Virus record (IMG/VR): IMGVR_UViG_3300032770_000001
Coordinates: 124,001-188,000 of that record
Direction: 5' to 3' (one strand)
Length of the DNA stretch: 64,000 nucleotides
The translations under genes were made by a program, and so were the position numbers. The notes beneath the pieces are model-generated. The model was not told where the DNA came from, ran no database searches, and worked only from the letters and a program-made list of their open reading frames with translations. Of this stretch, positions 4,433-17,202 are shown one piece after another (positions within the stretch are counted from its first letter, which is position 1; each line of letters starts with the position of its first letter).

Positions 4433-4446
4433 TTTTCCGCAGGTAG

Positions 4447-4475: not shown

Positions 4476-4491
4476 TATAGTAGAGCAATTT

Positions 4492-4578
4492 ATGAACCGT
4501 GTCTTCCTAGCATCGTTGCGACTGTATAGCTACCTTAGCGGTGGCTTCGGCGAACGTGTGCGTTGGCGCGGTTGGTAA
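4492..4578 (+). CDS. Putative 28-aa leader peptide MNRVFLASLRLYSYLSGGFGERVRWRGW
   Basis: ATG 16 nt after the -10 element; codons CTA, TTG, CTG, TAT, TAC, CTT clustered; followed by a terminator. Confidence 0.7.
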   Translation: MNRVFLASLRLYSYLSGGFGERVRWRGW

Positions 4579-4600
4579 AAGGCTAACAAAACGTTCGAGA

Positions 4601-4635
4601 GAAGCCGCCAAGGAATTGGCGGCTTTTCCATTTTT
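4601..4635 (+). terminator. Intrinsic terminator (attenuator) ahead of the tRNA genes
   Basis: AAGCCGCCAA-GGAA-TTGGCGGCTT 10-bp stem followed by TTCCATTTTT. Confidence 0.85.
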
Positions 4636-4646
4636 ACTGAGATTTT

Positions 4647-4735
4647 GCATGGGTAGTCAAGCGGCCAACGACAGGAGTCTGTAAAACTCCCGCTCTTAGT
4701 GAGCTACGCAGGTTCAAATCCTGCCCCATGCACCA
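4647..4735 (+). tRNA. tRNA-Tyr(GTA)
   Basis: GCATGGG/CCCATGC acceptor stem, GGAGT-CTGTAAA-ACTCC anticodon arm, long variable arm, encoded CCA. Confidence 0.95.
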
Positions 4736-4736
4736 T

Positions 4737-4829
4737 GCACGTCTGGCTGATTGGTAAGGCAGCGGGCCGTAACCCCGTCTCACCCCAAGGGGTGACTCGA
4801 TGGAAGTTCGATTCTTCCGGCGTGCACCA
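4737..4829 (+). tRNA. tRNA-Tyr(GTA), divergent copy with C33
   Basis: GCACGTC/GGCGTGC acceptor stem, loop CCGTAAC, long variable arm, TTCGATT T-loop, CCA. Confidence 0.85.
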
Positions 4830-4835
4830 AATTTT

Positions 4836-5063
4836 ATGAGAGTCGTTCAGACAGCATTGACGAAGAGAACCGAGACGGGCACCGCCCATCTCATCGCTTG
4901 GCTCCCGGTTGATCCGCGAGTGAAGCGCGGCACTGTTGTGTCGTTGGACAAGGACGACTCGAATCGCTGGACGGTTGAAGCGCAGTACGCAACTCAAGAG
5001 TCAGAGGAAATTAACGACAAATGGGGATTGAGGCTGCCGAAGTCGCAACGCACCGAGCGGTAA
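4836..5063 (+). CDS. Small hypothetical protein inside the tRNA array
   Basis: ATG just after tRNA-Tyr; 75 aa. Confidence 0.6.
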   Translation: MRVVQTALTKRTETGTAHLIAWLPVDPRVKRGTVVSLDKDDSNRWTVEAQYATQESEEINDKWGLRLPKSQRTER

Positions 5064-5267
5064 TTCAGTACGACGACGGCAAATCGCCGAAGTCGGACAA
5101 AGACAAGGTGCCGCAGTGCACGCGCCGTGGACGCCCGTTAGGGTTCTACGTGCTGCTGCCAGACGGCACCGAACGACCGCTGAACATCGGGTTCATGCGT
5201 GTCGGTGAGATGAGTGCTCTTGAGAGCCTCTTAAACGAGATAATGTGCTTTCAAGGGCACATGACAT

Positions 5268-5345
5268 GCGCAGGTGATGGGAACTGGCATACCTAGTCGA
5301 ATGAGATTCGGCTGTTTGTGGGTTCGAAGCCCACTCTGCGCACCA
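5268..5345 (+). tRNA. tRNA-Leu(GAG), short variable loop
   Basis: GCGCAGG/TCTGCGC acceptor stem, GTCGA-ATGAGAT-TCGGC, 5-nt variable loop, TTCGAAG T-loop, ACCA. Confidence 0.8.
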
Positions 5346-5391
5346 AGATATGGTAGACTCCGTGGTATTAGTTAATCATGAGGTCTGCCAC

Positions 5392-6180
5392 ATGAAGCTG
5401 AAGTACACGAAGGAAATGTTAGAGCCGTTGGTGCGAGAGAGCACCAGTTTTCGGCAGGTCATTGACAAGCTGGGTATACGTCAGGGCGGCGGCACTCAGG
5501 CTAACCTTGTTCGTCGCATTAAGGCGCATGGATTAGACACGTCTCATTTCCTCGGACAGGCGCACGGTCGCGGTAAGCTTCGCGTTCGTTTAATTGCTTC
5601 GGAGGTTCTCGTCAATAATCGGACAGGTCGCAGAGAACACACCGATGTGCTTAGACGGGTGATGTTGGAATCGGGCGTCCCGTACCACTGTGAGCTATGT
5701 CCTAATGATGGAACTTGGCAGGGCCGACCGATAGTTTTGGAGATCGATCACCGGAACGGAAACAATCTGGATAATCGATTGGAGAATCTTCGATTCCTCT
5801 GTCCGAACTGCCATAGCCAACAGGTGACGGATGGTTCGAAAAATATTGCACTTCGTGAATTTGAGAAAAAACAAGGCTGGGTTTTGAAGGATAGTACGAC
5901 GCCAACGGAGTTCATGGCTAAGCACTACGAGGAATTGGCTAATAAAGTGCGCGAGCGATATCCGGATATGGCGTCAATGTTGGAGAGAATTGCGGATAAA
6001 GTCCGCTCCTACCTCAGCATGAACAAGGCAACGGTTCGCGTGTTCATTCGTGCTGACGGACAAGGCGCTACTTTTTATGTGCAGGGCGATGAGGAATGTG
6101 ATGCGATTGCAAAAGTCCGCGATCTGGCTCGCGACCTCACGAAAGAAGCGCAGGAGGGTACAAGATTTCGTTTAGTTTGA
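5392..6180 (+). CDS. HNH endonuclease with a C-terminal extension
   Basis: CELC...LEIDHRNGNNLDNRLENLRFLCPNCH; N-terminus of the kind seen in tRNA-linked phage HNH genes. Confidence 0.9.
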   Translation: MKLKYTKEMLEPLVRESTSFRQVIDKLGIRQGGGTQANLVRRIKAHGLDTSHFLGQAHGRGKLRVRLIASEVLVNNRTGRREHTDVLRRVMLESGVPYHCELCPNDGTWQGRPIVLEIDHRNGNNLDNRLENLRFLCPNCHSQQVTDGSKNIALREFEKKQGWVLKDSTTPTEFMAKHYEELANKVRERYPDMASMLERIADKVRSYLSMNKATVRVFIRADGQGATFYVQGDEECDAIAKVRDLARDLTKEAQEGTRFRLV

Positions 6181-6229
6181 TGTGCTTTGTTGTATCAACG
6201 TCAAGTTTTGATGTAACAAAGCACATCGG

Positions 6230-6315
6230 GCCGGAATGGTGGAATTGGCAGACACACTCCGTTCAGCGCGGAGCGGTTAACAGCCATGGGGGTTCAAGTC
6301 CCCCTTCCGGCACCA
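6230..6315 (+). tRNA. tRNA-Leu(CAG)
   Basis: GCCGGAA/TTCCGGC acceptor stem, CTCCG-TTCAGCG-CGGAG, long variable arm, ACCA. Confidence 0.9.
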
Positions 6316-6319
6316 AGTT

Positions 6320-6405
6320 CGGGTCGCGGCGAATGCGAGGGATGTTTTCCGGAAAACGCTACCTCGGTCACGCCGATAAAAACCGCGTGATGAGCGACCT
6401 GACCA
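6320..6405 (+). ncRNA. tRNA-like RNA with an 8-bp terminal stem and an ACCA end
   Basis: CGGGTCGC/GCGACCTG plus ACCA; internal helices GAGG/CCTC, GTTTT/AAAAC, TCACGC/GCGTGA; no T-loop consensus. Confidence 0.55.
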
Positions 6406-6409
6406 TTTT

Positions 6410-6495
6410 GCGGCTGTGGTGGAATGGCAGACACGCAGCGTTGAGGGCGCTGTTCTCGAAAGGGAGTGAAGGTTCAAGTCCTTTCAGCCGCACCA
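6410..6495 (+). tRNA. tRNA-Leu(GAG), canonical
   Basis: GCGGCTG/CAGCCGC acceptor stem, CAGCG-TTGAGGG-CGCTG, long variable arm, ACCA. Confidence 0.95.
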
Positions 6496-6540
6496 GTTTT
6501 AGTACGTTTCCGATTTTCGGAAAATCGGATTTGACAAAAT

Positions 6541-6619
6541 GCGTGGGTGAGGCAATTAGGCAGACCTCTTACGCTTAGAACGTAAGGTTTTGGGGGTTCG
6601 ATTCCCCCTCCACGCACCA
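6541..6619 (+). tRNA. tRNA-Leu(TAG), short variable loop
   Basis: GCGTGGG/TCCACGC acceptor stem, TTACG-CTTAGAA-CGTAA, 6-nt variable region, ACCA. Confidence 0.9.
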
Positions 6620-6624
6620 GTTTC

Positions 6625-6702
6625 GCCGGGATGATGCAATTTGGCAGACATCTTCGCCTCAAAATCGAAGTTCTGCGGGTTCGAGTCCCGCTCCCGGCAC
6701 CA
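6625..6702 (+). tRNA. tRNA-Leu(CAA), short variable loop
   Basis: GCCGGGA/TCCCGGC acceptor stem, loop CTCAAAA, 5-nt variable loop, ACCA. Confidence 0.9.
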
Positions 6703-6765
6703 AACCTCTCAAAACAAAGCACTTAAACCTAGCTAAAAACGACTCCCCGCAGGTAGAATAAGGGT

Positions 6766-6993
6766 ATGGAAATCACCTTGGCTACCATCATCTCGGCGGA
6801 ACTCGCGGCACAGGAAAAGCAGATTCCTCTTCCGGTCGGTGCAGTCATGATCGGCAAGCTGTTCACAGTCATCGAAAATGATGGCTCAGCCGCTATCGCC
6901 GAAGAGGTCACTGATGCTATACTGGCTGCGCGTGTTCGCCTGACGCCGGAGCATCAAGTCGGACAGAAGGTGCGATTCGTCCATTTCAACTGA
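6766..6993 (+). CDS. Small hypothetical protein, possibly leaderless
   Basis: TAGAAT 6 nt upstream of the ATG. Confidence 0.65.
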   Translation: MEITLATIISAELAAQEKQIPLPVGAVMIGKLFTVIENDGSAAIAEEVTDAILAARVRLTPEHQVGQKVRFVHFN

Positions 6994-7002
6994 GAGGCTC
7001 TC

Positions 7003-7182
7003 ATGTCGATCCCCGTACCGATCACCAAAGAAGAAGTCAAGAAGATCACCAGAGAACTCAAGAAGCCGCAGGACGTGATCTGTCTTGACGTGGACTCCCA
7101 CCTTAAGACCCTGCTCGTTGGGCAGAGCATGTTGCTGCTCGGCAAGACCGTCAAGGCAAAAATCGTCAAGGGTTACAAATGA
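7003..7182 (+). CDS. Small hypothetical protein (59 aa)
   Basis: GAGG RBS; MSIPVPITKEEVKK...; ATGA overlap with the next gene. Confidence 0.6.
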   Translation: MSIPVPITKEEVKKITRELKKPQDVICLDVDSHLKTLLVGQSMLLLGKTVKAKIVKGYK

Positions 7183-7499
7183 AGCGCGGCCTGTGGGAGA
7201 TTTTGGTTCCGGTCGTCAATAACCGGGGCAAGAAAATCCCTGTCAAATTTCATCAGGGTTGGGACGCCAAGGTGCGTGCCATCAGCGGCGGCTTGACTAT
7301 CCGTAAGCCGGAGAAGGGTCAGTGGGTTCACCCGGAATCGAAGTCCCTGTTCGCCGAGAAAATGATCCCGGTGAAATTCATGGGCACCCGTGACGAGGCG
7401 GACCAGATCGCACAGATGACGCTGGAGTATTACGACCAGCAGGCGGTCATGTGCTACAAGATCGCGGAAGAAGTCATCATGAAGGTTCGTTCCAGCTAG
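7179..7499 (+). CDS. Hypothetical protein
   Basis: 106-aa ORF, translationally coupled. Confidence 0.7.
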   Translation: MKRGLWEILVPVVNNRGKKIPVKFHQGWDAKVRAISGGLTIRKPEKGQWVHPESKSLFAEKMIPVKFMGTRDEADQIAQMTLEYYDQQAVMCYKIAEEVIMKVRSS

Positions 7500-7511
7500 G
7501 TATTATCTAGT

Positions 7512-7793
7512 GTGGATGACCGCGACACGTTCGACCGCAAGTGCGTAGAGTTGCACATGGCGGTCTATTTTCACATGCAGGCGATTCAGTTCGCCGACGA
7601 GCGCAACGCCGAGCCGGGGGAGATGCGTGAACTCCTGAAACGGCGAACCGATCTGGTTCAGGAAGCGTTGGATTACGTCTACGAGCATTGGGAGTATCTG
7701 GACGAGCCGACCAAGAAAGATTGGGAAGCTGCGGCTGCGGAGTTCCCACTAGCGAGAGAGAATGAAAACAGCGAAGCTACCGACGAAGATTGA
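7512..7793 (+). CDS. Helical hypothetical protein
   Basis: 93-aa ORF; GGTATTA 6 nt upstream of the start. Confidence 0.65.
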   Translation: MDDRDTFDRKCVELHMAVYFHMQAIQFADERNAEPGEMRELLKRRTDLVQEALDYVYEHWEYLDEPTKKDWEAAAAEFPLARENENSEATDED

Positions 7794-8409
7794 CAGTTTC
7801 CGGGGCGTATACCGCTTCCTGTCGAACTTCTACGAGAACTGCCCGGTGAAGCTGTGGGTGAGCACCAAGGGCAAGGTCTTTGCGAATTACGATGGGCTCT
7901 ACGGAATTGTCGAGCACATCAACTCGTTCAATCATCTGCCGGACGATCATCCGGATCGCGATTTTCTGTACTGGATTGAGACTTACGACAACGTCGAGAA
8001 TGCGTATCAGGCGGCGAAGTCCCTCGACATAAACGTTCGTGAGAAGTTCCGTGTTCGCGGCCTGCGTCCGTGGGATGCGAAGAAGCTTGGCGGCACAGTG
8101 AAACTACGTCCTGATTGGGATACAGGCACCGGGACTATGCCGCCGTTTAAGATTGTGGTCATGCTCGGTTTGCTGATGCAGAAATTTGAGCCGACCATGC
8201 TACGGCGTCGTCTGCTTTCAACGATGACGGCTGAATTGATTGAGGGCAACAACTGGCACGACACGTATTGGGGCGTCTGCGACGGGAATTGCAACGAAGG
8301 TCCGCATGAACCGTTCGGCACCAACCATCTCGGCAGGCTGCTGATGATCGTGCGAGGGTATCACGGAGGTTTGTACGATGGCACGAGTATTCTTACAGCG
8401 CGTCAGTGA
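7762..8409 (+). CDS. NADAR (YbiA-like) family protein
   Basis: FLSNFY, ENAYQAAK, LRPDW, LIEGNNWHDTYWG, NHLGRLLM. Confidence 0.9.
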   Translation: MKTAKLPTKIDSFRGVYRFLSNFYENCPVKLWVSTKGKVFANYDGLYGIVEHINSFNHLPDDHPDRDFLYWIETYDNVENAYQAAKSLDINVREKFRVRGLRPWDAKKLGGTVKLRPDWDTGTGTMPPFKIVVMLGLLMQKFEPTMLRRRLLSTMTAELIEGNNWHDTYWGVCDGNCNEGPHEPFGTNHLGRLLMIVRGYHGGLYDGTSILTARQ

Positions 8410-8560
8410 CGCGCTGGATTGGCTGTACGAGTTCCGGATTCCGATTGTTCTGGTGATCCTGCTCGTCCTGATGTTTGCGTTTCATAGCTGCGAGTTCCGC
8501 ATTTCGATTGATTCGCGCCCTTCGGAGACGACGACCGAACAAGGTGCTCGAAAATAATTG

Positions 8561-8589
8561 TTGACAGTGAATCGACTTTCTGGTATTGT
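8561..8589 (+). promoter_or_regulatory. Sigma70-type promoter of the Pro tRNA operon
   Basis: TTGACA 8561-8566, 17-nt spacer ending TGG, TATTGT 8584-8589. Confidence 0.8.
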
Positions 8590-8694
8590 ATATGTGTAGT
8601 CGGCCATGCGACAAGCTTCCTTCTAAACTTGCTCATTGGCGAACAAAAACAGCTTTCGCGATATCCGACTCATATATTAGGAGCTAGTCTTCAA

Positions 8695-8772
8695 ATGACA
8701 TTGATGCGACCAACGCCGACGTTTCGACCGTGCACACCTACCGTGCGCGGGGGAATCGGACACACCCTTTAG
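8695..8772 (+). CDS. Putative 25-aa Pro/Thr-rich leader peptide MTLMRPTPTFRPCTPTVRGGIGHTP
   Basis: AGGAG upstream; Pro codons CCA, CCG, CCG, CCT, CCT; followed by mutually exclusive hairpins. Confidence 0.6.
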   Translation: MTLMRPTPTFRPCTPTVRGGIGHTL

Positions 8773-8870
8773 GGTTCCGGTCGCACCCCGCGCTGCTAGG
8801 CGACGGGGCTCTGGCAAGTTGTGAATTTCCCAACATTACTGCCATTTTTACCCCGTCCTTGTGCGTAAGT

Positions 8871-8945
8871 CAGGGCGTGGTGTAGTGGTTGCATCCCGCA
8901 TTTGGAATGCGGTGGTCGCTGGTTCGACCCCAGCCGCCCTGACCA
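8871..8945 (+). tRNA. tRNA-Pro(TGG), divergent
   Basis: CAGGGCG/CGCCCTG acceptor stem, CCGCA-TTTGGAA-TGCGG, ACCA. Confidence 0.9.
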
Positions 8946-8950
8946 ATCAT

Positions 8951-9027
8951 CAGGGTAGAGTTGGGTCTGGTTCAATCCCCGCCTCGGACGCGGGTGTTCG
9001 CGGGTTCAAATCCCGCTGCCCTGACCA
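8951..9027 (+). tRNA. tRNA-Pro(CGG), divergent
   Basis: CAGGGTA/TGCCCTG acceptor stem, CCCGC-CTCGGAC-GCGGG, ACCA. Confidence 0.85.
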
Positions 9028-9043
9028 AATTTCTGAGGTCAGT

Positions 9044-9202
9044 ATGTTTGAGGCGAGTGAGTGGCGGCATAAAGGTTGTGGTGGTCAGCCCTGTGAGTTT
9101 GAGCCGGGGCGGTGGGCTTGCACGGGGTGCAAGCGTGCATGGTACGCTGGAGCGAACTTTTTCACGTACCTCGCAAACGTGGTCTTTGAAAAGAGAGTCT
9201 GA
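9044..9202 (+). CDS. Small Cys-containing protein (52 aa)
   Basis: MFEASEWRHKGCGGQPC...CTGC; short, support is weak. Confidence 0.4.
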   Translation: MFEASEWRHKGCGGQPCEFEPGRWACTGCKRAWYAGANFFTYLANVVFEKRV

Positions 9203-9350
9203 GGTGGAGCGACAGAGGTGGGCAAGTGGCATCGCTGCCTGTGTCGTTGTACGAAGCGTGGGGGCTTGCTCCTGCGTTAGTCCACAGTACAGCCTGCCCA
9301 ACCGATGCCGGATGGCTGCCGAGTCGCCCATAAATTTCGTTTCGAGGAAT

Positions 9351-9427
9351 CAGGATGTAGCTTAGCTTGGTAAAGCGCGTGCTTGGGGTGCACGAGACCG
9401 GGAGTTCAAATCTCCCCATCCTGACCA
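9351..9427 (+). tRNA. tRNA-Pro(GGG)
   Basis: CAGGATG/CATCCTG acceptor stem, CGTGC-TTGGGGT-GCACG, ACCA. Confidence 0.95.
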
Positions 9428-9459
9428 AAAATTTGAGAAGTAACAAGACCGAGGAAGGT

Positions 9460-9516
9460 ACATGGATGCTGGGGCGGTGTGCGCACACGTGAGTTCAATG
9501 CTCACTCCATGTACCA
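9460..9516 (+). ncRNA. 57-nt mini-tRNA (acceptor stem, T-arm and CCA; no D-arm or anticodon loop)
   Basis: ACATGGA/TCCATGT plus ACCA; GTGAG-TTCAATG-CTCAC T-arm. Confidence 0.55.
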
Positions 9517-9586
9517 TCGGATATTCCGACACGCTAAGATTGTACGGTGCGTGACATCGAGTGGAAGTCTCGAAACAGGTTTTTGA

Positions 9587-9658
9587 TGCGGGGTAGTGTA
9601 GTAGCGCACGGAAGTCTCATAAACTTCCAGACCAGTGCGACTCTGGCGACCGCAACCA
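9587..9658 (+). tRNA. Degenerate tRNA(CAT), Met or Ile2
   Basis: GAAGT-CTCATAA-ACTTC anticodon arm, short D-arm, T-loop TGCGACT, mismatch in the acceptor stem, ACCA. Confidence 0.7.
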
Positions 9659-9661
9659 TTT

Positions 9662-9737
9662 CGGTGTGTAGCTCAATGGCTAGAGCACTCGGTTTGGGGC
9701 CGAGGGGTTGGGGGTTCGAGTCCCTCCACGCCGACCA
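9662..9737 (+). tRNA. tRNA-Pro(TGG), canonical
   Basis: CGGTGTG/CACGCCG acceptor stem, CTCGG-TTTGGGG-CCGAG, ACCA. Confidence 0.95.
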
Positions 9738-9752
9738 TTTTGGAGAACGAAC

Positions 9753-10413
9753 ATGATTGTTGAAATTCGAGCAGCGGAAGGTGGAGATGACGCAAAGCTT
9801 CTCGTGTCCGACCAACTCACGATCTATGCGAGATTGGCGGCTCGGAGGGGTCTTTGAGTTTGAGATAACCGAAGAACGTCCCGGCATAGCGGTGTTTCAG
9901 GTGACGGGACAGGGAGCCCCGGCGTTGTTTGCAAATGAGAGCGGGGGGCACCGTTGGCAGCGAGTTCCGCCGACCGAACGATACGGACGACGGCAGACAT
10001 CGACAATCACTGTCGCAGTTTTCGAGGAGCCGAAGGTCGAAGAGATCAACATTCGTGCTCAGGATTTAGAGTGGGATACGTTCCGGAGCCGTGGTAAGGG
10101 CGGACAGAACGTTAACAAGGTCGAGACGGCTGTTCGCGTGACGCACAAGCCGAGTGGCTTGGTCGTGCGTTGTGAGAATGGCCGTAGTCAGTGGCATAAT
10201 AAGCGAACCGCTTTGCAGATTCTTGCGGCACGGTTGGAAGCGCGAGATCGAGAGCAGAGACAAAGCGTAGTGGTTGCAGATCGTCGGTCGCAGATCGGCA
10301 CAGGGCAGCGAGGCGACAAACGTCGTACAGCAAACGAGCGACAGGATCAAGTCACGGATCATGTCACCGGGCAGAAATGGCGCTATACTGATTACGTGAA
10401 GGGGAACTGGTAA
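9753..10413 (+). CDS. Class I release factor homolog (RF1-like PxT, GGQ, no N-terminal domain 1), expressed through a +1 frameshift at CTT-TGA 9852-9857
   Basis: ORF0 MIVEIRAAEGGDDAKLL...RRGL* (9753-9857); the +1 frame continues with RVPPTE, GGQNVNKVETAVR, RSQIG; GGAG RBS at 9742. Confidence 0.9.
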
Positions 10414-11024
10414 TGGAACAGTATCCGAGTATCGACGGTAGCAGCAAAGCACCCATAGGGGTTCCGTGCATCGCTTTTTATAAGTACGACGGCTCTAACC
10501 TTCGATGGGAGTGGAACCCCAAGAAGGGCTGGTTCAAGTTCGGTACGCGGACGCAGTTGTTCGGTAAGGATGATCCGTTGTGGGGCAAGGCGGTGCCGAT
10601 TTTCATGAACCAACTGGCGGATGAGATCGTGTACCGGGTCAAGCACGTGGAGCGGGGCTGTCAGCGGATCACGGCGTTCACGGAGTTTTTCGGATCGGGG
10701 ACATTCGCCGGACAGCACCCGGAGATGACTGGCGGCAGCGAGGAGAAGGAATTGAGGCTCTTCGATGTCTACCTGTTCAAGCGGGGCTTGATGAAACCTC
10801 GGCAGTTCGTGAAGAGTTTTGGCGATCTACCGCAGGCGGCTCAGGTGATCTATGATGGAAACCTGAACCGACAGTTCATCGAAGACGTTCGGATGGGGCT
10901 GTACCCAGTGAATGAGGGGGTGGTTGCGAAGGGTGACGATTTCATGGTGAAGATCAAGACCTACGCATACCTGAAGCGGCTGAACGAAGTTTACGGAACT
11001 GCATATCGGAACTATTGGGAGTAA
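10413..11024 (+). CDS. ATP-dependent RNA ligase-like nucleotidyltransferase
   Basis: KYDGSN, EFFG, FDV, EGVV, KIKT motifs; TAATG overlap with the release factor gene. Confidence 0.75.
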   Translation: MEQYPSIDGSSKAPIGVPCIAFYKYDGSNLRWEWNPKKGWFKFGTRTQLFGKDDPLWGKAVPIFMNQLADEIVYRVKHVERGCQRITAFTEFFGSGTFAGQHPEMTGGSEEKELRLFDVYLFKRGLMKPRQFVKSFGDLPQAAQVIYDGNLNRQFIEDVRMGLYPVNEGVVAKGDDFMVKIKTYAYLKRLNEVYGTAYRNYWE

Positions 11025-11100
11025 TTTTGAAGGCGATTTTTCAGTTTGTTCGCAGGATTTTTCGCCGGGGCGAGTATCGTCCTATAGGGTGTTGGTGAGG

Positions 11101-11177
11101 CGGGGATTAGCTCAGCTTGGTAGAGCGCACGCTTCGGGAGCGTGAGGTCGCAGGTTCGAATCCTGCATCCCCGACCA
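11101..11177 (+). tRNA. tRNA-Pro(CGG), canonical
   Basis: CGGGGAT/ATCCCCG acceptor stem, CACGC-TTCGGGA-GCGTG, ACCA. Confidence 0.97.
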
Positions 11178-11216
11178 ATATCAAACCCTTTAGATAGACC
11201 GATATTTGGAGTCCCC

Positions 11217-11642
11217 TTGGCAAACGACGATAGTTTTTTTGAAGGTGGAGAGCGGCAGGAGAACCTGAACCGCCATAACGCCCGGAAGGGTGGGTATGAC
11301 CCGTTTAGGGTCACCGCAGGTCAAGAAAGACGCGGTGAGCGTATTACGTGGGTCGATGTCTGGCTGGCTAATCCAGACGGAGCCGCCAATCACGATGAGG
11401 CTGAGGCACTCTCGGTAGGCGACGTAATGAAACACGTAGCGTCAGAGAACGATTTGTATGTAGGTTTTGAGAAAGAACTGGCTGAGGTTCAGCGAGAGTC
11501 TTTCGATGAGTCAGGTGTCAAGCTGGCGAACATGGGGTCGAGAGAGTTCTTCAAAGACTCCCCACCCCCGGCACCAGTACCCGCCCCACGTGTGGCGGCA
11601 CCAGTGAAGAAGTCGGATGACGATTTCTTCCCAAAATTTTAA
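11217..11642 (+). CDS. Acidic hypothetical protein
   Basis: TTG start after GGAG; Pro-rich tail ending DDDFFPKF. Confidence 0.5.
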   Translation: MANDDSFFEGGERQENLNRHNARKGGYDPFRVTAGQERRGERITWVDVWLANPDGAANHDEAEALSVGDVMKHVASENDLYVGFEKELAEVQRESFDESGVKLANMGSREFFKDSPPPAPVPAPRVAAPVKKSDDDFFPKF

Positions 11643-11643
11643 C

Positions 11644-11721
11644 GCCTGTGTAGCTCAGACTGGCTAGAGCGCCCGTCTCATAAGCGGGAGGTCGGGGGTT
11701 CGATGCCCTCCACAGGCACCA
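11644..11721 (+). tRNA. tRNA(CAT), elongator Met or Ile2
   Basis: GCCTGTG/CACAGGC acceptor stem, CCCGT-CTCATAA-GCGGG, ACCA. Confidence 0.92.
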
Positions 11722-11909
11722 GTTTTAGGGAGACCGGGAACCTGCGGGCCCTTCCGAGGCTATAGCACCAGCGGCAACGGTGATTAACTGCCCAAACACA
11801 GTATCGGATACCCGGCAATTCTATTCAACAGGAGGATGAAGCAGATGGCTAACCCTAGCATCACCGTACATACCGTGTAAGGTGTGGACGGTGGGAGGTA
11901 AAAAGCCAA

Positions 11910-12227
11910 ATGCGTCACCCTCGCACCCGCGACGAACGTCGCGCTGTACGCGAGCAGATCATTGCTCGTCGCAAATTTATCGCAACCCAGATTTGGGACA
12001 TTCCGTCCTACGTCCGCCCTCCGCATGAAGGCGAATGGAACCGTTGGTCGAAGCCAGAGGAATGGGAGCCATTTCAGTGGGGTCGCTACCACAAGTGGAA
12101 CATGAACTGTGGCGATACCATGTGTCATGGTGCGAAGTATTTCAAATGCGCTTCCAAGCGTCGTAAAGCACGCAAGGAAGCCGAGTCAACCGCCGAGTTT
12201 CGTCGTCGAAATAAGGCCATCGATTGA
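11910..12227 (+). CDS. Basic hypothetical protein
   Basis: 105 aa, Arg/Lys/Trp-rich; GGAGG upstream. Confidence 0.65.
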   Translation: MRHPRTRDERRAVREQIIARRKFIATQIWDIPSYVRPPHEGEWNRWSKPEEWEPFQWGRYHKWNMNCGDTMCHGAKYFKCASKRRKARKEAESTAEFRRRNKAID

Positions 12228-12252
12228 CAATGAAAAGACTTTGGACTAGCGT
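12224..12252 (+). promoter_or_regulatory. Possible sigma70 promoter of the ncRNA array
   Basis: TTGACA 12224-12229, 17 nt, TAGCGT. Confidence 0.45.
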
Positions 12253-12309
12253 ATTATTTATTGCGGGGTCTGGTTAAACCCTAGTGGCGATGACCACTCC
12301 CCGGTTTTA

Positions 12310-12505
12310 CCCCGGCACCCGATACGCAACGGGGCGCTAGTGATTAGGAAGGGTCGAGGCGAACTGCGTGCCCCCAAGGTGGGGCTAGCCGAAAGCCCGG
12401 ATAACGTCCGACGTGGTGCCCGGTTCTAGTCAACCGTCGTGCGTCTACCTTTCGGGGAATTACAAGTACCCGAAAGGACGTGATGATGCAGTGCACTTGC
12501 CGGGG
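12310..12505 (+). ncRNA. Structured RNA A (about 195 nt, class unknown)
   Basis: Closing stem CCCCGGCA/TGCCGGGG; CCTTTCGGG/CCCGAAAGG; GCCCC/GGGGC. Confidence 0.55.
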
Positions 12506-12526
12506 TTCTTTGATCTTTGATAGTTT

Positions 12527-12762
12527 TAGAGTCGAGTGGCCCGTGATTCAACTGGTTCAGTGGTTTCAGTAAGAGGGTCGAATGGCCTGTCAGGGACAAA
12601 TAGATACTCCCTGAGCGATGTTAGACCGCTATCCCCAGTATAAAAAACGCAGCAGCGGGGGCAGTATCCGTAAGGACTGCGGGAGGCTCCACGAAAAGGT
12701 GCTAGACAACCTGTGGGAGGCCGTATCGGGGTTCTAGCTAAACCGACCTGTGCTCGACTCTA
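12527..12762 (+). ncRNA. Structured RNA B (about 236 nt, class unknown)
   Basis: 11-bp closing stem TAGAGTCGAGT/GCTCGACTCTA; flanked by T-runs. Confidence 0.65.
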
Positions 12763-12770
12763 ATTTTTAT

Positions 12771-12862
12771 GGCGGATGCCCGGATAGCGTAAGCAGTCAC
12801 GTGAAAGTCGTGTTAACAGCCGGGGCGGGGATGTTGGCGTAAGCCAAGCGAACCATCCGCCA
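12771..12862 (+). ncRNA. Structured RNA C (92 nt, GNRA loops, ends in CCA)
   Basis: GGCGGATG/CATCCGCC closing stem; GTAA, GAAA and GTAA tetraloops. Confidence 0.6.
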
Positions 12863-12867
12863 AGGTT

Positions 12868-12939
12868 TTGCCGCTGTGGTATGAAACGCTACCAAATGGG
12901 CACGGTTCCGAAAGGACGCAATGGCCCTGCCAGCGGCAA
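12868..12939 (+). ncRNA. Structured RNA D (72 nt)
   Basis: TTGCCGCTG/CAGCGGCAA closing stem; TCC-GAAA-GGA hairpin. Confidence 0.55.
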
Positions 12940-12948
12940 CGTTTTTGA

Positions 12949-13025
12949 TGCGGGGTGGAGCAGTCAGGTAGCTTGTCGGGCTCATAACCCGAAGGTCGGC
13001 GGTTCAAATCCGTCCCCCGCTTCCA
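12949..13025 (+). tRNA. Initiator tRNA-fMet(CAT)
   Basis: Three G-C pairs in TCGGG-CTCATAA-CCCGA; unpaired 1:72 (U:U); CCA. Confidence 0.9.
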
Positions 13026-13029
13026 AGTG

Positions 13030-13318
13030 TTCGCCGCCGTGGGTTGTTAGTTGTACTCAGAGTGCCGTCAGGAACAGCAAGATCGTACTAGTACCTGAGA
13101 GCGCAACCCACGGTTTAGAGGCGATTGCCGTCACCTGCGGATGTAGTACGGTCTGGGCGTCAGGTGCGCCGGGTCGGTGACCCAGACCGGAGCGACATCG
13201 TTGACCGGACATTCCGGTTTCGTTAGCAGGTCCTCATGGGACATCAGCATGGTGCCTGAGTAGTGCTGAAGTTCGAGGAACCGCGAAAGCGTGAAACCTG
13301 TGAAGCGATCCTCAGGCC
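13030..13318 (+). ncRNA. Structured RNA E with an H-type pseudoknot
   Basis: CCGTGGGTTG/CAACCCACGG; crossing helices CACCTG/CAGGTG and CGGTCTGGG/CCCAGACCG. Confidence 0.6.
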
Positions 13319-13331
13319 GATCTTTGAAAAG
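13319..13331 (+). promoter_or_regulatory. rRNA-type boxA-like element
   Basis: GATCTTTGAAAAG between two structured RNAs. Confidence 0.55.
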
Positions 13332-13332
13332 T

Positions 13333-13482
13333 TTGCGGCGGCGTTCCCGGTGTCCCGTCAATAGACTGGTTCCTGACCGGATACGTGAGTAATCGTTCTT
13401 CAAGGGGTGAAATAAAAGAACGGCGCAGAACAGGTTCCTGCGCGTGGGGCTGTGATTTTCCAGCTACTACCTCTCGCCGCAA
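13333..13482 (+). ncRNA. Structured RNA F (150 nt)
   Basis: TTGCGGCG/CGCCGCAA closing stem; GCGCAG/CTGCGC and CGTTCTT/AAGAACG hairpins. Confidence 0.55.
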
Positions 13483-13489
13483 TATAACA

Positions 13490-14025
13490 AATCTGCAAGT
13501 TGCATTCCGATGCCCGAAGCGCCCGATGAGGGTTTGCGGACGGTAGCGTGACTTGCGGAGGGTAGGTGAACGGCTTCACAGCCGCCGTCGAAAGACGGGC
13601 AAGTCCGCCGTAAATTCGGGACGACGTTCACCCGGTCAGGCACTACTAAAACAGAACCGTGGGGTGCCGTCAGTCGAGAGACTGGATGTTTCTGATTGCG
13701 CATGGCATGGCGAGGTCTCCCTATGTTTGGACGGAGGCAGGCCCTTTTCGACAAGGGACATACGTCAGAGCGGAATCACGGTGGGTATGTGGTTGGAACC
13801 ATCCATGTAGTGGCCTGACGCCTAATTTCAGTTTCCGGTCGTGGCGGAAAAGAGACGATAAACAAATAGAGACGCTAAAACTCGCTGAGAGGATGTACCC
13901 TGATTTCGACAGGGATTCTCAGCCTGTGAGACTCTGTAGGTAGCACCCACGTCTGACAGATGTTAGTGGCTCGAAAGAGCAGCAGAGTCATGCACCGTGG
14001 AGAATCGGGAATCGGTGCCGACTGG
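13490..14025 (+). ncRNA. Large ornate RNA (about 540 nt; GOLLD/ROOL-like candidate)
   Basis: Many nested helices including a long-range 13635-13646/13807-13819 pairing, GNRA loops, no credible CDS. Confidence 0.65.
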
Positions 14026-14103
14026 AAGATTTTTGGAGACAACATGAATAGCACTCACACCCCGACCGGATGACCCTTGCTCATCCTTCGGAGGTAAGGT
14101 AAT

Positions 14104-14361
14104 ATGGCATGTGACACCTGTATCTTTCTGAACAACGTTCGGACCCGCCCGGTAGGGAAGGGAAAGGACGAGCAGAAAGGCGAGAAGCTGGAGCCCTGCT
14201 CCATGAAATATGCCTGCAATCCGTTTTGGGACGGAGCGCAGGGAGTGGGCAAGGTCGTGACTGAGTCGTACTGTGCGACCTGCTCGGAAGTAGCTGACAA
14301 ATGTGGATGCACGCAAGGATTGCGTGTGATCCGGCAGCGCAAGCTGCATTATGCTCGGTAA
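14104..14361 (+). CDS. Cys-rich small protein
   Basis: 85 aa with CxxC repeats; GGAGG upstream. Confidence 0.55.
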   Translation: MACDTCIFLNNVRTRPVGKGKDEQKGEKLEPCSMKYACNPFWDGAQGVGKVVTESYCATCSEVADKCGCTQGLRVIRQRKLHYAR

Positions 14362-14363
14362 CC

Positions 14364-14450
14364 ATGAAGATTGACGACGGAACATTGATGGCGATTGGAC
14401 TGCTGGTGTTTGCAGCGTTTTACATTCTGTCTCCATTGATCGTCGGGTAA
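14364..14450 (+). CDS. 28-aa single-TM peptide
   Basis: MKIDDGTLMAIGLLVFAAFYILSPLIVG. Confidence 0.45.
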   Translation: MKIDDGTLMAIGLLVFAAFYILSPLIVG

Positions 14451-14451
14451 G

Positions 14452-14645
14452 TTCGTGCGGCTGACTCGCCTTGAGCAGGGCTATCTTAGGTGCCCTGAGC
14501 GCACACAAGCTTCAGCAGCGACGGAGTTATGACCCGTAGGGGGTTATGAGCCCTTTGGCTGCTGAGAGGGAAGTGAGTACCAGTGGCAACCGCGAAAGCG
14601 CCGATGCCCACGCCCTCCGTCCAGTTGCCTACACGTGCGCAACCT
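14452..14645 (+). ncRNA. Pseudoknotted structured RNA G
   Basis: GCGCAC/GTGCGC closing stem; CAGCAGC/GCTGCTG; loop-loop GACGGAG/CTCCGTC; GGCAAC/GTTGCC. Confidence 0.6.
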
Positions 14646-14707
14646 TTGCTTTTGGACGTGAATATTAAAATGCGAAGGAACGTCATCATAACGTGGTATT
14701 AGGTAAT

Positions 14708-15034
14708 ATGGCTGCTGAAATTCTCGAAGACGTTTACTTGCACATTGGCAACGGTGGGGTCCAGTTTCAGGTCCACCGGGACAATAAAGGGCGTTGCCTC
14801 CTGAAGGTTGGAGCATCGCATTTCGGTCAGAAGACCAACACGATGGAGTTGCTTGTGACTCCCGATAGCCTGCGGCAGATCGGCGAAGCTTTTGTTCGCG
14901 CATCGCAGCAAGAGTTCCCCGGCAAGCCGTATGTTTACAGCGCCGAGGTTCCGGTGTACACTGGTTCTGGTAACGCCGAAAGCAGCACGGGCGGCGATGA
15001 ACCAAAGCAGGAACCGCAGCAATTGACAGTTTAA
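14708..15034 (+). CDS. Hypothetical protein
   Basis: ATG 6 nt after GGTATTA; 108 aa. Confidence 0.7.
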   Translation: MAAEILEDVYLHIGNGGVQFQVHRDNKGRCLLKVGASHFGQKTNTMELLVTPDSLRQIGEAFVRASQQEFPGKPYVYSAEVPVYTGSGNAESSTGGDEPKQEPQQLTV

Positions 15035-15090
15035 CGTTCCCGAACGCAAACCGGGTGGTGGATCGTATCACTGAGACGTGATGCCCCTGC

Positions 15091-15120
15091 GGGGCAACCA
15101 AAAGTTGCCCCCGTTGTTTT
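15091..15120 (+). terminator. Intrinsic terminator
   Basis: GGGGCAAC-CAAAA-GTTGCCCC followed by CGTTGTTTT. Confidence 0.65.
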
Positions 15121-15132
15121 ATCAAAGATTTT

Positions 15133-15315
15133 ATGGCAGAAACGACCGAACGTTATATCGTGACTCACCACCAGCCATCTGAGTGGTACAACGTTTGGGA
15201 TAAACTGTGGACGACTGATGTCGTAAAAGTCAGCAGTCTCACAGGACGCGGCAAAGAGATTGCCGACAAGATTTGCGCAGACTTGAACGCTCACCCGTTC
15301 CCGCCTGCGGAATGA
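15133..15315 (+). CDS. Small hypothetical protein
   Basis: 60-aa ORF. Confidence 0.55.
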   Translation: MAETTERYIVTHHQPSEWYNVWDKLWTTDVVKVSSLTGRGKEIADKICADLNAHPFPPAE

Positions 15316-15411
15316 GTTTTCGAACTATTAGGATCATTACTGAATGAAGCTCTACGACTACACTCTCGACTTGTTTACCAGCCCCTTCCGGGGCTTGTAA
15401 TACGTGTGTCT

Positions 15412-15488
15412 GGGGCGGTAGCTCAGTCCGGTAGAGCGAGGGCCTGAAAAGCCCTGCGTCGTAGGTTCAAATCCTACCCGTCCCACCA
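15412..15488 (+). tRNA. tRNA-Phe(GAA)
   Basis: GGGGCGG/CCGTCCC acceptor stem, AGGGC-CTGAAAA-GCCCT, ACCA. Confidence 0.95.
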
Positions 15489-15514
15489 AATTTCTCAATC
15501 ACACAATTCAAATT

Positions 15515-16000
15515 TCAAGGGGACGTAGCTGATGTGGTCTTAGCGCGGGCCTGAAAAACCTGAGATGGAGGTTCGATTCCTCTCGTCCCCACCAATTTTC
15601 TTCGCGCCGTAACTTTCCGATGACAATTCGCGCAACGTACCTCGCACTTGGCGATCTCCCGTTTGATGGAGTCTAAACTGTATCCGCTTCTGACCATGAA
15701 ACAAATCTCCAGCCGTTTCTTACCACGAACATGGTCAAAATCAAGGCATACCGGATCAGTCTCCGGGCAGTCCACGCAGCCATGAGTCGCGAGATATGAT
15801 TGGACATACCGTTTGTTCCGTAACCTATCCGCACGCTTTCGAGCCCTGACCTTAGTTGCTCGCGTTTTCGAGTTCGCGTAGTATCCGGTATTGTAGTTGG
15901 ACATACAGGTCTTGCAGTGTGAACGGCGAGTGCCGAGGGTTTTATTCCGGAAATGGAACTCGCCCTCGGCTTTATTCGCATTGCATTTCGTACAAATCAT
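15515..16000 (-). CDS. HNH endonuclease whose 3' end overlaps tRNA-Phe in antisense
   Basis: CVDC...LDFDHVRG...CEVRCANCH; ATG 16000 overlaps the upstream TGA. Confidence 0.85.
   Translation of the reverse strand: MICTKCNANKAEGEFHFRNKTLGTRRSHCKTCMSNYNTGYYANSKTRATKVRARKRADRLRNKRYVQSYLATHGCVDCPETDPVCLDFDHVRGKKRLEICFMVRSGYSLDSIKREIAKCEVRCANCHRKVTARRKLVGTRGIEPPSQVFQARAKTTSATSP
15519..15594 (+). tRNA. tRNA-Phe(GAA), divergent
   Basis: GGGGACG/CGTCCCC acceptor stem, loop CTGAAAA, TTCGATT T-loop, ACCA. Confidence 0.9.
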
Positions 16001-16788
16001 ACAATTGCAGCCACGAAGGGCACCGCAAATCCGCCACGTAGACACTCTAATGCAAGCACGCCTTTGGGGGTCAGGGTGTAACCGTAAATAGGACGGCTGA
16101 TGTCGATGCTGTCGGAAATACGACCCAATGCACCGGGCTCGTCATTCGCTTTTTTCTCGATCCAGCCAATACGTTCGGCTAAACGACGATGGTCTGCCGG
16201 GAGATAAAGCCCCGCAGCCTCGTAGTCCGATTTCGGAATCCCGAAAGAAATGGCTTGCCCTTCGACCTCTTCAAGGACCGCGATCATAATCAGTTCGTGA
16301 AAACGACGTTGAATTGGATTTTTGCGATCATCCTCGCGTTTTAACTGATGGACGAGTGAACGATAAAAAGCACGAAGGTTGACGACACCCGCAGCCGCGT
16401 TAATGCGCTCGCGCATCTCAATGAGAGGCAGTTTGCGCTGTTCTTCTGGTGTCGGTAGAGTTGCTGCGACGTTAGGTAAAACTGAACCGTAACGACGCTC
16501 GTGTTCTTTGAGACGGGTAGCTAGAAGATCGATGGCCTCTTCAAGGACTTGCGGCTTGAAAACTCGCAAATAATCCTTCCAGATCATGACGTGTTCATCG
16601 TCTTGAGGAAATCCGAAGGGTTGGATGATTTTTTCGGTCCAAAGAGCGTCCAAAAGCGGGACGATGATAGCGCAATCAGCTTCGAACTGTTTTGCTTTGT
16701 TGTGGTTGTGGATGTAATTACGGCGGGAATCCGCCAATTGAGGCTCTGGGGTTACCAGAGAAGGATCGTGATACGGTGTTGTAGTCAT
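15997..16788 (-). CDS. Hypothetical protein (263 aa)
   Basis: AGGAG RBS; coupled to the HNH gene. Confidence 0.7.
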   Translation of the reverse strand: MTTTPYHDPSLVTPEPQLADSRRNYIHNHNKAKQFEADCAIIVPLLDALWTEKIIQPFGFPQDDEHVMIWKDYLRVFKPQVLEEAIDLLATRLKEHERRYGSVLPNVAATLPTPEEQRKLPLIEMRERINAAAGVVNLRAFYRSLVHQLKREDDRKNPIQRRFHELIMIAVLEEVEGQAISFGIPKSDYEAAGLYLPADHRRLAERIGWIEKKANDEPGALGRISDSIDISRPIYGYTLTPKGVLALECLRGGFAVPFVAAIV

Positions 16789-16899
16789 TGTGACTATCTC
16801 CTATGGGTGTTTTTTGTTTCGCGATAGTCGGCACCGAGTTGGGTGTCTAGCTATCTACATAAGAGATGCCATAGTCCACCAAATGGTTTCACTTTCGTT

Positions 16900-16983
16900 C
16901 TATTTTTTCACACCGTGTGCGTGTTTGAAGTGGTCGATCAGTAGAAATGCGCTGAACGTCACCAGTACCAGAATGACTGTCAT
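16900..16983 (-). CDS. 27-aa membrane peptide
   Basis: GGAG RBS; MTVILVLVTFSAFLLIDHFKHAHGVKK. Confidence 0.45.
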   Translation of the reverse strand: MTVILVLVTFSAFLLIDHFKHAHGVKK

Positions 16984-17202
16984 GATGGTTTTCTCCACAG
17001 GTACTAAGGCACGTCGCGTGCCACGTCTATCCCCCGTGTTATCAGTAAGTCGTCAACACCACCTGTTGCGATTCTCATCGCTGCTTTTCTCAACCCCAGT
17101 GTTGATGCGATTTTTTGCTGTGGCGAAATTAAGCGGCCATTGATGTATTTCTAAGCATCAAAAATCACAGACTATTCTGCAAAATCGCTGGTATTAAACA
17201 GT

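What the first reader, a model, noticed from the sequence alone, without database searches (positions are those of the whole stretch)
13490..14025. Large ornate RNA, GOLLD/ROOL-like candidate
Helices seen: 13494-13503/13548-13557; GGTGAACG/CGTTCACC (13565/13625); long-range 13635-13646/13807-13819; GCTGAG/CTCAGC (13884/13918); GACTCTG/CAGAGTC (13930/13983); GCACCG/CGGTGC; GAAA and GAGA tetraloops; and a tRNA-D-loop-like GTGGCGGAA...AGACGC. Established: GOLLD and ROOL RNAs are large, phage-associated and tRNA-adjacent. Family identity is not established here.
Basis: partly seen in the sequence, partly recalled or inferred. Interest (0 to 1): 0.65.

Follow-up and report, generated by a model that had tools for sequence, protein, structure and literature searches.

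The report
New structured RNA in huge phage
The last 200 bases of the flagged stretch are a real, well-folded non-coding RNA of a family not found in Rfam 15, carried among the tRNA genes of a group of very large wetland phages; it is not GOLLD or ROOL, and the first 340 bases have no comparative support.

Summary
The window is part of a 455.7-kb phage record. Positions 13490-14025 lie in an ORF-poor stretch of its tRNA island. No Rfam 15 model matches, even at E<=10 on a 1-kb slice: not GOLLD, ROOL, group I intron or Y RNA.

The finding splits in two:
- **13830-14031 ("module E").** A self-contained ~200-nt RNA closed by a 10-bp stem. I found 16 homologs in related huge phages and wetland or soil metagenomes. 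16 of 26 modelled pairs show compensatory changes, 93% of cells pair, and 0 of 500 shuffles reach this. Two loops are nearly invariant. A homolog left out of the model still scores E 1e-17.
- **13486-13826.** About 340 nt that relatives lack at this site. Its only other copy is a 99%-identical sister strain. Support is thermodynamic only.

Neighbouring RNA units change partners between genomes, so this is an array of separate RNA genes, not one large RNA. In relatives the array includes YrlA-like tRNA mimics.

Most likely module E is a stable trans-acting RNA made with the tRNAs. Its partner is unknown and its expression is untested.

The parts
13830..14031 (+). Module E: self-contained ~200-nt structured ncRNA of a family not in Rfam 15. 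This is the real feature inside the finding.
   Evidence: Model R1 scores it 153.9 bits, E 1e-42. There are 16 homologs. 16 of 26 pairs have compensatory changes, 93% of cells pair, 0 of 500 shuffles reach this. z -3.24 and the minimum-energy fold equals the centroid.
13832..13841 (+). P1 5' strand (UUUCCGGUCG). It pairs with 14019-14028 (CGACUGGAAG) and closes the module.
   Evidence: 10 pairs, 7 with changes on both sides, 95% paired. The phage G005 copy has UUCUCGGUUG/CAAUCGAGAA.
13842..13877 (+). P2 (UGGCG 13842-13846 / CGCUA 13873-13877) enclosing the 26-nt loop L2 (GAAAAGAGACGAUAAACAAAUAGAGA).
   Evidence: L2 is nearly invariant in 15 sequences. Three homologs carry two extra small hairpins inserted inside it. 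P2 itself never covaries, and the pairs at its outer end are broken in 2-3 sequences.
13884..13923 (+). P3, a variable hairpin (GCUGAGA 13884-13890 / UCUCAGC 13917-13923, with inner CCCUG/CAGGG).
   Evidence: Every homolog forms a hairpin at this place, with a different sequence and length.
13930..13989 (+). P4 (GACUC 13930-13934 / GAGUC 13985-13989) enclosing a three-way junction with P5 (13944-13968) and the GNRA-capped P6 (GCUC-GAAA-GAGC, 13969-13980).
   Evidence: 4 of 5 P4 pairs have compensatory changes. The P6 loop is GAAA, GCGA, GCAA, GUGA or GUAA in most homologs; two of the window's own subtype lack it.
13992..14018 (+). P7 (GCACCG/CGGUGC) with the 15-nt loop L7 (UGGAGAAUCGGGAAU).
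   Evidence: 5 of 6 pairs have compensatory changes. The loop has at most 2 changes (one copy a 1-nt deletion) in 14 of 15 sequences, G005 included.
13486..13826 (+). Lineage-specific ~340-nt stretch of three stem-closed units: I1 13493-13558, I2 13565-13632, I3 13635-13819.
   Evidence: Absent between the upstream conserved part and module E in L008b and L009. No homolog in any fetched locus or in the phage's own genome. 99% identical in sister-sample contig L066. z -3.49, -3.01 and -1.34 for I1, I2 and I3. Two stem SNPs keep pairing.
13200..13345 (+). Module D1, context only: a conserved upstream RNA unit with a pseudoknot (GCCUGAG 13254-13260 / CUCAGGC 13311-13317).
   Evidence: Aligned with L008, L009, L013, L011 and L015. 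Compensatory changes occur in L011 (GUCUGAG/CUCAGAC) and L015.
12949..13025 (+). tRNA-Met (CAU), the upstream landmark of the RNA array.
   Evidence: ARAGORN and Rfam.
14104..14361 (+). Small protein with 8 invariant cysteines, usually found downstream of module E.
   Evidence: tblastn finds full-length homologs in 10 distinct relatives' loci; 8 of them also carry module E and L013 does not. L016 holds only a C-terminal remnant. 8 invariant Cys. No Pfam or PHROGs match.

Best explanation
The finding covers two different things.

(1) Positions 13830-14031 are a gene for an independently folding ~200-nt non-coding RNA, module E.
- A 10-bp terminal stem (P1) closes a multi-way junction. The junction carries P2 with a 26-nt conserved loop, a variable hairpin P3, a P4 three-way junction ending in a GNRA hairpin, and P7 with a 15-nt near-invariant loop.
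- It lies on the tRNA strand, between tRNA-Met and the tRNA-Phe pair, in the tRNA island of a clade of roughly 300-460-kb phages.
- Inferred, not shown: it is transcribed with the tRNA array and freed by the nucleases that process the tRNAs. P1 protects it from exonucleases. It then acts in trans, with the two conserved loops and junction strands forming the surface that binds a protein or RNA partner of the translation or RNA-metabolism machinery.

(2) Positions 13486-13826 are a lineage-specific run of three further stem-closed units. They may be additional small RNA cassettes, but nothing beyond folding energy supports them.

The whole 12230-14100 stretch is an array of exchangeable RNA cassettes (B, D1, E; in relatives also YrlA-like tRNA mimics), not one giant RNA.
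For: - No Rfam family matches.
- Homologs: 6 copies in IMG/VR relatives found through DNA polymerase, and 13 true hits out of 13 in metagenome contigs.
- Covariation: 14 of 26 pairs on the MAFFT alignment, 16 of 26 on the model-based alignment, 0 of 500 shuffles, slid controls 30-55% paired against 93%.
- Model R1 finds an untrained, more distant copy in phage G005 at E 1e-17. It finds one intact copy per genome.
- Strand: the conserved G-U pair in P2 and the U-A to U-G changes in P1 fit only the + strand.
- Not coding: copy lengths run from 171 to 246 nt, with indels confined to hairpins.
- Cassette behaviour: E is directly preceded by the D region in L008b and L009, by B in L067 and L074, and by a YrlA-like RNA in L070. 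It is followed by a YrlA-like unit in L076.
- L066 is 99% identical to the window up to the 5' conserved part of E and then diverges.
- Position between tRNA-Met and tRNA-Phe holds in nearly all loci.
Against: - No expression data. No RNA run holds the stretch. The laid DNA contigs show only strain variants.
- No promoter or terminator signal above background.
- No partner identified.
- An ORF start lies within about 30 nt of P1 in most loci, and the 8-Cys gene is within 800 nt in most. A cis role is therefore not excluded.
- E is absent from a complete 463-kb relative (G004) and from four partial records, so it is dispensable.
- For 13486-13826 there is no comparative evidence at all.
Confidence: 0.55

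Rival explanations
1. Module E is a cis-acting leader (riboswitch or protein-binding operator) that controls translation of the ORF just downstream, ultimately the 8-Cys small protein.
For: - A Shine-Dalgarno sequence plus start codon lies 2-30 nt after P1 in most loci.
- The 8-Cys gene is downstream of E in the window and 8 further loci, at +15 to +800 nt.
- In the distant phage G005, E is again followed by a Cys-rich ORF of different sequence.
- The size and the conserved junction core resemble large riboswitch aptamers.
Against: - The ORF immediately downstream is not homologous between loci: a 9-codon mini-ORF, 48-, 55- and 137-aa ORFs, or the 8-Cys protein.
- E is followed by a YrlA-like RNA in L076 and by a tRNA fragment in L008a.
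- L013 keeps the 8-Cys gene without E.
- No alternative pairing with the ribosome-binding site was seen.
Confidence: 0.2
2. The D region, the 340-nt stretch and E together form one large RNA of 800 nt or more. It would work like GOLLD or ROOL but be too diverged for their models.
For: - About 1.9 kb has no ORF longer than about 100 aa.
- D runs straight into E in L008b and L009.
- It is phage-borne and tRNA-adjacent, as GOLLD and ROOL are (PMC5737381).
Against: - No GOLLD or ROOL hit at E<=10 in the window or in L009.
- Each unit is closed by its own terminal helix.
- E has other upstream partners in other genomes: B, a YrlA-like RNA, and others.
- No long-range helix was seen joining the units.
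Confidence: 0.1
3. Positions 13486-13826 are a group I intron or a small mobile element inserted into the RNA array.
For: - Relatives lack it at exactly this junction.
- The flanks happen to read ...AAU | ... CAG |, which fits the U / terminal-G rule of group I splice sites.
Against: - No group I model hit at E<=10 on a 1-kb slice.
- The fold is three consecutive closed hairpin units without a P3/P7 pseudoknot.
- The 'exon' context is not conserved, because E's upstream neighbour varies.
- It is single-copy in the genome.
- By my reading of the sequence there are no inverted terminal repeats or clear target duplication.
Confidence: 0.03
4. Conservation of E reflects a DNA-level or processing role, such as a recombination hotspot or a nuclease-blocking spacer that stabilises the tRNA precursor, and not an RNA with a function of its own.
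For: - A recombination breakpoint lies inside E's 5' conserved segment in L066.
- Scars lie nearby: a tRNA-Pro 3' fragment after E in L008, and a degenerate second copy, L008b.
Against: - Near-invariant unpaired loops together with covarying stems are the signature of selection on a folded RNA surface.
- G-U pairs make the constraint strand-specific.
Confidence: 0.07

Closest known systems
GOLLD and ROOL large ornate RNAs
   Same: Phage or prophage-borne, next to tRNA genes, complex multi-helix folds with conserved unpaired regions, function unknown (PMC5737381 and 10.1101/2024.12.08.627333).
   Different: No covariance-model match. The conserved unit is about 200 nt, against roughly 580-800 nt (sizes from my own knowledge). 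There is no evidence of self-assembly. The taxonomic setting differs: huge wetland or soil phages.
Bacteriophage T4 RNA C and RNA D
   Same: Phage-encoded RNAs of still unknown function (PMC9697503). That they are stable and lie in the T4 tRNA gene cluster and are processed with the tRNAs is from my own knowledge.
   Different: Module E is larger and has a five-helix junction architecture.
YrlA / bacterial Y RNAs (Rfam RF02553)
   Same: A terminal stem made by the 5' and 3' ends closes a functional module. Genuine YrlA-like RNAs lie directly beside module E in relatives: L070 at E 7e-8, L068 at 4e-6, G011 at 5e-10.
   Different: E itself has no YrlA hit, no T- or D-arm mimic, and GGUCGUGG instead of the GNCGAAN0-1G motif. 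The window's phage has no Ro60/TROVE gene.
tRNA cloverleaf (architectural analogy only)
   Same: The helix order (closing stem, stem with a large conserved loop, variable arm, extra arm, stem with a conserved loop) echoes acceptor, D, anticodon, variable and T arms.
   Different: Not detected by ARAGORN or by the Rfam tRNA and tmRNA models. About 2.7 times larger. No CCA end and no anticodon loop.

Membership tests
GOLLD RNA | Match to the family covariance model (Rfam 15) | tested here: not met
   No hit at gathering score on the window. None at E<=10 on 4000-17000, on 13026-14100, or on relative L009, which lacks the 340-nt stretch.
GOLLD RNA | One large conserved multi-domain RNA (roughly 800 nt; size from my own knowledge) | tested here: not met
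   The conserved unit is 171-246 nt. Flanking units change between genomes.
GOLLD / ROOL | Phage or prophage location next to tRNA genes | tested here: met
   455.7-kb virus record. tRNA-Met lies about 800 nt upstream and tRNA-Phe about 1.4 kb downstream.
GOLLD / ROOL | Self-assembly into RNA-only multimeric complexes | not testable with these tools
   Needs cryo-EM, SEC or native gels (10.1101/2024.12.08.627333).
ROOL RNA | Match to the family covariance model (Rfam 15) | tested here: not met
   no hit.
YrlA / Y RNA | Covariance-model match and a tRNA-like T/D-arm module | tested here: not met
   No RF02553 hit in the window or in the whole phage G000. Neighbouring units in relatives do match.
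YrlA / Y RNA | GNCGAAN0-1G Ro60-binding motif near the 5' end, and a Ro60 gene in the genome | tested here: not met
   Motif as defined in PMC4201824. Module E has GGUCGUGGCG there. The TROVE family is absent from G000.
Group I intron (for 13486-13826) | Covariance-model match, P3/P7 core, conserved exon context | tested here: not met
   No hit at E<=10. The fold is three closed hairpin units. The upstream context of E is variable.
tRNA / tmRNA | Detection by ARAGORN or by the Rfam tRNA and tmRNA models | tested here: not met
   Nothing in 13026-15400.
Module E family (defined here, model R1) | P1 closing stem; P2 with the loop ...ACGAU...AAAUAGAGA; P4; P7 with the loop UGGAGAAUCGGGAAU | tested here: met
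   Window 13830-14031 scores 153.9 bits over the full model length. The window's sequence was part of the training alignment. The untrained G005 copy scores 67 bits, E 1e-17.

The most novel reading that the evidence does not exclude
The tRNA islands of this clade of huge phages carry a toolkit of several undescribed complex-fold RNA classes (module E, pseudoknotted D1 and the roughly 240-nt module B, beside YrlA-like tRNA mimics). These are swapped between genomes as cassettes. Module E is a trans-acting RNA that engages the translation or tRNA machinery, possibly as a particle with the co-located 8-Cys small protein.
Probability: 0.25. Interest if true: 0.75.

Novelty: new variant of a known kind. 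Interest (0 to 1): 0.55.

Why it matters
Huge phages are known to carry tRNAs and translation factors, but little is described about their non-coding RNAs. This is a covariation-backed RNA fold with near-invariant loops. It is absent from Rfam 15's 4227 families, and its two most conserved motifs were not found in a full-text search of open papers. It sits in an island where at least two other conserved structured RNAs and Y-RNA-like tRNA mimics are shuffled like gene cassettes. That gives concrete, small (about 200 nt) targets for structure determination and partner pull-downs. It also suggests that phage tRNA arrays are broader RNA toolkits for taking over or protecting host translation. Model R1 makes the family searchable.

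Tried and rejected
- **Flanking proteins.** The flanking small proteins found no relatives in IMG/VR.
- **Deposited phages.** blastn of 12230-14100 against deposited phage genomes hit only tRNA-Met.
- **Pattern scans.** The first two IMG/VR patterns returned mostly chance hits in coding sequence besides the known copies. A pattern for small variants returned only G005. A scan of 185k species genomes gave 3 chance hits and no homolog.
- **Y RNA idea for module E.** Rejected: no TROVE and no RtcB in the phage, no motif, no model hit.
- **The 340-nt stretch.** nhmmer and sensitive blastn against all loci and the rest of the window found nothing. One weak hit (L003) lies inside a coding region.
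- **ORFs inside the finding.** The 85-, 94- and 95-aa ORFs have no PHROGs match.
- **Expression.** Its weakly supported joint 13329->E (side 24) hints at another variant.
- **8-Cys protein.** No Pfam match. The AlphaFold2 model has pLDDT 39, so it is unusable and no fold search was run. The Atlas look-alike search was uninformative.
- **Loop-loop pairing.** Between L2 and L7 only an invariant 4-bp CGAU/AUCG is possible, with no covariation.
- **Literature.** A full-text search for the two conserved motifs found nothing relevant.
- **Not used.** The large protein searches, and any genetic code other than table 11.

Full report
**Setting**

The window is bases 124001-188000 of a 455,708-bp virus record that CheckV rates as complete. 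Positions 4.6-15.6 kb hold 16 tRNA genes, all on the + strand. Small genes are interleaved with them: an HNH endonuclease, a NADAR-domain protein, an RF-1-domain protein and an RNA-ligase-like protein. A family-A DNA polymerase follows at 17895.

The finding lies in a 1.9-kb stretch (12230-14100) with no ORF over about 100 aa on either strand. One tRNA-Met (12949-13025) sits inside that stretch.

**Observation**

- The whole 551 nt folds better than shuffles, but equally so on both strands (z -2.60 and -2.76).
- Taken apart, 13830-14031 gives z -3.24 with the minimum-energy fold equal to the centroid.
- 13478-13832 gives z -0.92.
- The first two hairpin units of that part give -3.49 and -3.01 alone, and the third gives -1.34.

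**Known families**

Rfam 15 gives only tRNAs at gathering score. Nothing relevant appears at E<=10 on 13 kb or on the 1-kb slice 13026-14100 with laxer filters. Nothing appears on relative L009 either, where the extra 340 nt is missing. GOLLD, ROOL, group I intron, Y RNA, tmRNA and riboswitch models therefore all fail.

**Relatives**

The DNA polymerase recovered 12 IMG/VR loci at 46-70% identity. Searching those records with 12230-14100 showed patchy conservation. The conserved patches are 12308-12511, 12522-12767, 12766-12837, the tRNA, 13223-13346, 13383-13406, 13826-13879 and 13981-14033. Nothing matches between about 13410 and 13825.

The last two patches are the ends of one unit. A strict pattern from its 5' part hit 13 metagenome contigs, all true members. 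One of them is the window's own contig.

**Module E (13830-14031)**

Architecture:
- P1, UUUCCGGUCG/CGACUGGAAG, closes the unit.
- P2, UGGCG/CGCUA, carries the 26-nt loop L2.
- P3 is a variable hairpin.
- P4, GACUC/GAGUC, encloses P5 and the GNRA-capped P6.
- P7, GCACCG/CGGUGC, carries the 15-nt loop L7 (UGGAGAAUCGGGAAU).

Covariation:
- On the 14-sequence MAFFT alignment, 26 pairs are 92% paired. 14 have changes on both sides, 0 of 500 shuffles reach this, and slid controls are 32-53% paired.
- Covariance model R1 realigned 16 copies: 93% paired, 16 of 26 pairs compensatory, 0 of 500 shuffles.
- P2 is invariant, so it is untested.
- G-U pairs fix the strand as +.

Distribution:
- R1 finds an untrained, shorter copy in the 300-kb phage G005 (67 bits, E 1e-17). 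Its P1 has compensatory changes against the consensus (e.g. C-G to U-A), its P7 stem differs from the window's, and its L7 is identical.
- Copies per genome: one in G000, G002, G005, G008 and G009; two in G001, one of them degenerate; none in complete G004 or in four partial records.
- No copy turned up in 185k prokaryote species genomes by pattern.

Copy lengths of 171-246 nt, with indels confined to hairpins, exclude coding.

**The 5' two-thirds (13486-13826)**

In L008b and L009 the upstream conserved part ends ...CCCGCCACAAUCG and runs straight into E's P1. The window has about 340 extra nt there.
- The stretch has no homolog in the phage's own genome, in relatives, or in any fetched locus.
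- Contig L066, from a sister wetland sample, is 99% identical through it. L066 then switches to a different module E allele inside E's 5' conserved segment, which is a recombination mosaic.
- Of the three SNPs, two lie in predicted stems and keep pairing (U-A to U-G, G-U to A-U). This is weak support.
- ORFs inside it have no family match.

**One RNA or many?**

Many.
- E is directly preceded by the D region in L008b and L009. It is preceded by module B in L067 and L074, and by a different unit in most others.
- That other unit is a tRNA mimic with its acceptor stem capped by a loop. It matches Rfam YrlA over the full model at E 7e-8, 4e-6 and 5e-10, below the gathering score.
- In L076 this unit follows E instead of preceding it.
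- A Ro60 (TROVE) gene occurs only in G011, not in the window's phage.
- D1 (13200-13345) has a pseudoknot with compensatory changes.
- Module B (12522-12767) is a highly conserved fold of about 240 nt whose closing stem covaries.
- Each unit is closed by its own terminal helix.

**Function**

Expression could not be tested, because no RNA runs hold the stretch. Promoter and terminator scans are at background.

The 8-Cys small protein (14104-14361) lies 15-800 nt downstream of E in the window and 8 further loci. However, the ORF immediately downstream varies between loci, and L013 keeps the protein without E. The protein has no family match and could not be modelled.

I therefore favour a stand-alone, trans-acting stable RNA made with the tRNAs (0.55) over a cis leader (0.2). 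This is inference. The closest functional analogues are T4 RNA C and RNA D, whose function is still unknown (PMC9697503; their tRNA-cluster location is from my own knowledge), and the neighbouring Y-RNA-like mimics (PMC4201824).

**Verdict**

A real structured RNA of a family not in Rfam 15 occupies the last 200 nt of the finding. It is not GOLLD or ROOL. The first 340 nt remain unsupported.

Noticed in passing
window 12522-12767: Module B, a conserved structured RNA of about 240 nt. Its closing stem is AGAGUCGAG/CUCGACUCU here, UAGCCGAG/CUCGGCUA in relatives and UAGCCCAG/CUGGGCUA in L011. It has long invariant internal strands such as CCCCAGUAUAAAAAACGCAGCAGCGGGGG. No Rfam hit. In L067 and L074 it lies directly upstream of module E.
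   Followed up: partly
window 13200-13345: Module D1: a conserved RNA whose hairpin loop GCCUGAG (13254-13260) pairs with downstream CUCAGGC (13311-13317). This pseudoknot has compensatory changes in L011 and L015.
   Followed up: partly
window 13394-13475: Two further hairpins conserved with L008 and L009: CGUUCUU...AAGAACG (13394-13422) and GUGGGG-CUG...CAG-...CCUC (13445-13475). The second shows CUG/CAG to CCG/CGG covariation.
   Followed up: no
window 12308-12511 and 12766-12837: Two more conserved non-coding patches. The first is 70-73% identical to L009, L010 and L016. The second is 92% identical to L009 and L010, where it lies between tRNA-Met and tRNA-Gln.
   Followed up: no
L070:707-817(-), L068:582-695, L078:1280-1398(-), G009:1171-1284, G011:79027-79139: YrlA-like tRNA mimics: T-arm, acceptor stem capped by a loop, D-arm, and a long closing stem. 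They lie next to module E in relatives. Only G011 also encodes a TROVE/Ro60 protein (a 477-aa frame covering the matches at G011:127158-127928). The window's phage has neither.
   Followed up: partly
L008:2905-2952: An orphan tRNA-Pro 3' half (T-arm, acceptor 3' strand and CCA) lies about 20 nt after the first module E copy, with no matching 5' half. A second, degenerate E copy is at L008:6990-7199. Both look like recombination scars.
   Followed up: partly
L066:1-1054 vs window 13318-14357: A sister-sample contig is 99% identical up to about 13855. It then carries a different module E allele and a 75%-identical 8-Cys protein. The recombination breakpoint lies inside E's conserved 5' segment.
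   Followed up: yes
window 14104-14361: A family of small proteins of about 82-85 aa with 8 invariant cysteines (CxxC...C-x5-C...CxxC...CxC) and a basic C-terminal tail. Conserved across the phage clade. No Pfam or PHROGs match, and the AF2 model is unusable.
   Followed up: partly
window 14044-14073: A 9-codon mini-ORF (MNSTHTPTG*) with a GGAG ribosome-binding site starts 15 nt after P1. L066 has a 10-codon counterpart (MKNASGIQTG*). A short U-rich tract follows P1 in most homologs.
   Followed up: no
window 14569-14681: A non-coding patch between the 8-Cys gene and the next ORF is 83% identical to L076:875-988. It may be another RNA module.
   Followed up: no
window 4647-15594: The tRNA island holds 16 tRNAs (Tyr x2, Leu x5, Pro x5, Met x2, Phe x2). 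It also holds an HNH endonuclease (5350-6180), a NADAR protein (7762-8409), an RF-1-domain protein lacking most of the PCRF domain (9757-10413) and an RNA-ligase-like protein (10413-11024).
   Followed up: partly
L028:1720-1860 (phage G005): Downstream of the diverged module E in the 300-kb phage G005 is another Cys-rich ORF (MHNRECCGCENEV...). It has no evident sequence similarity to the window's 8-Cys protein.
   Followed up: no
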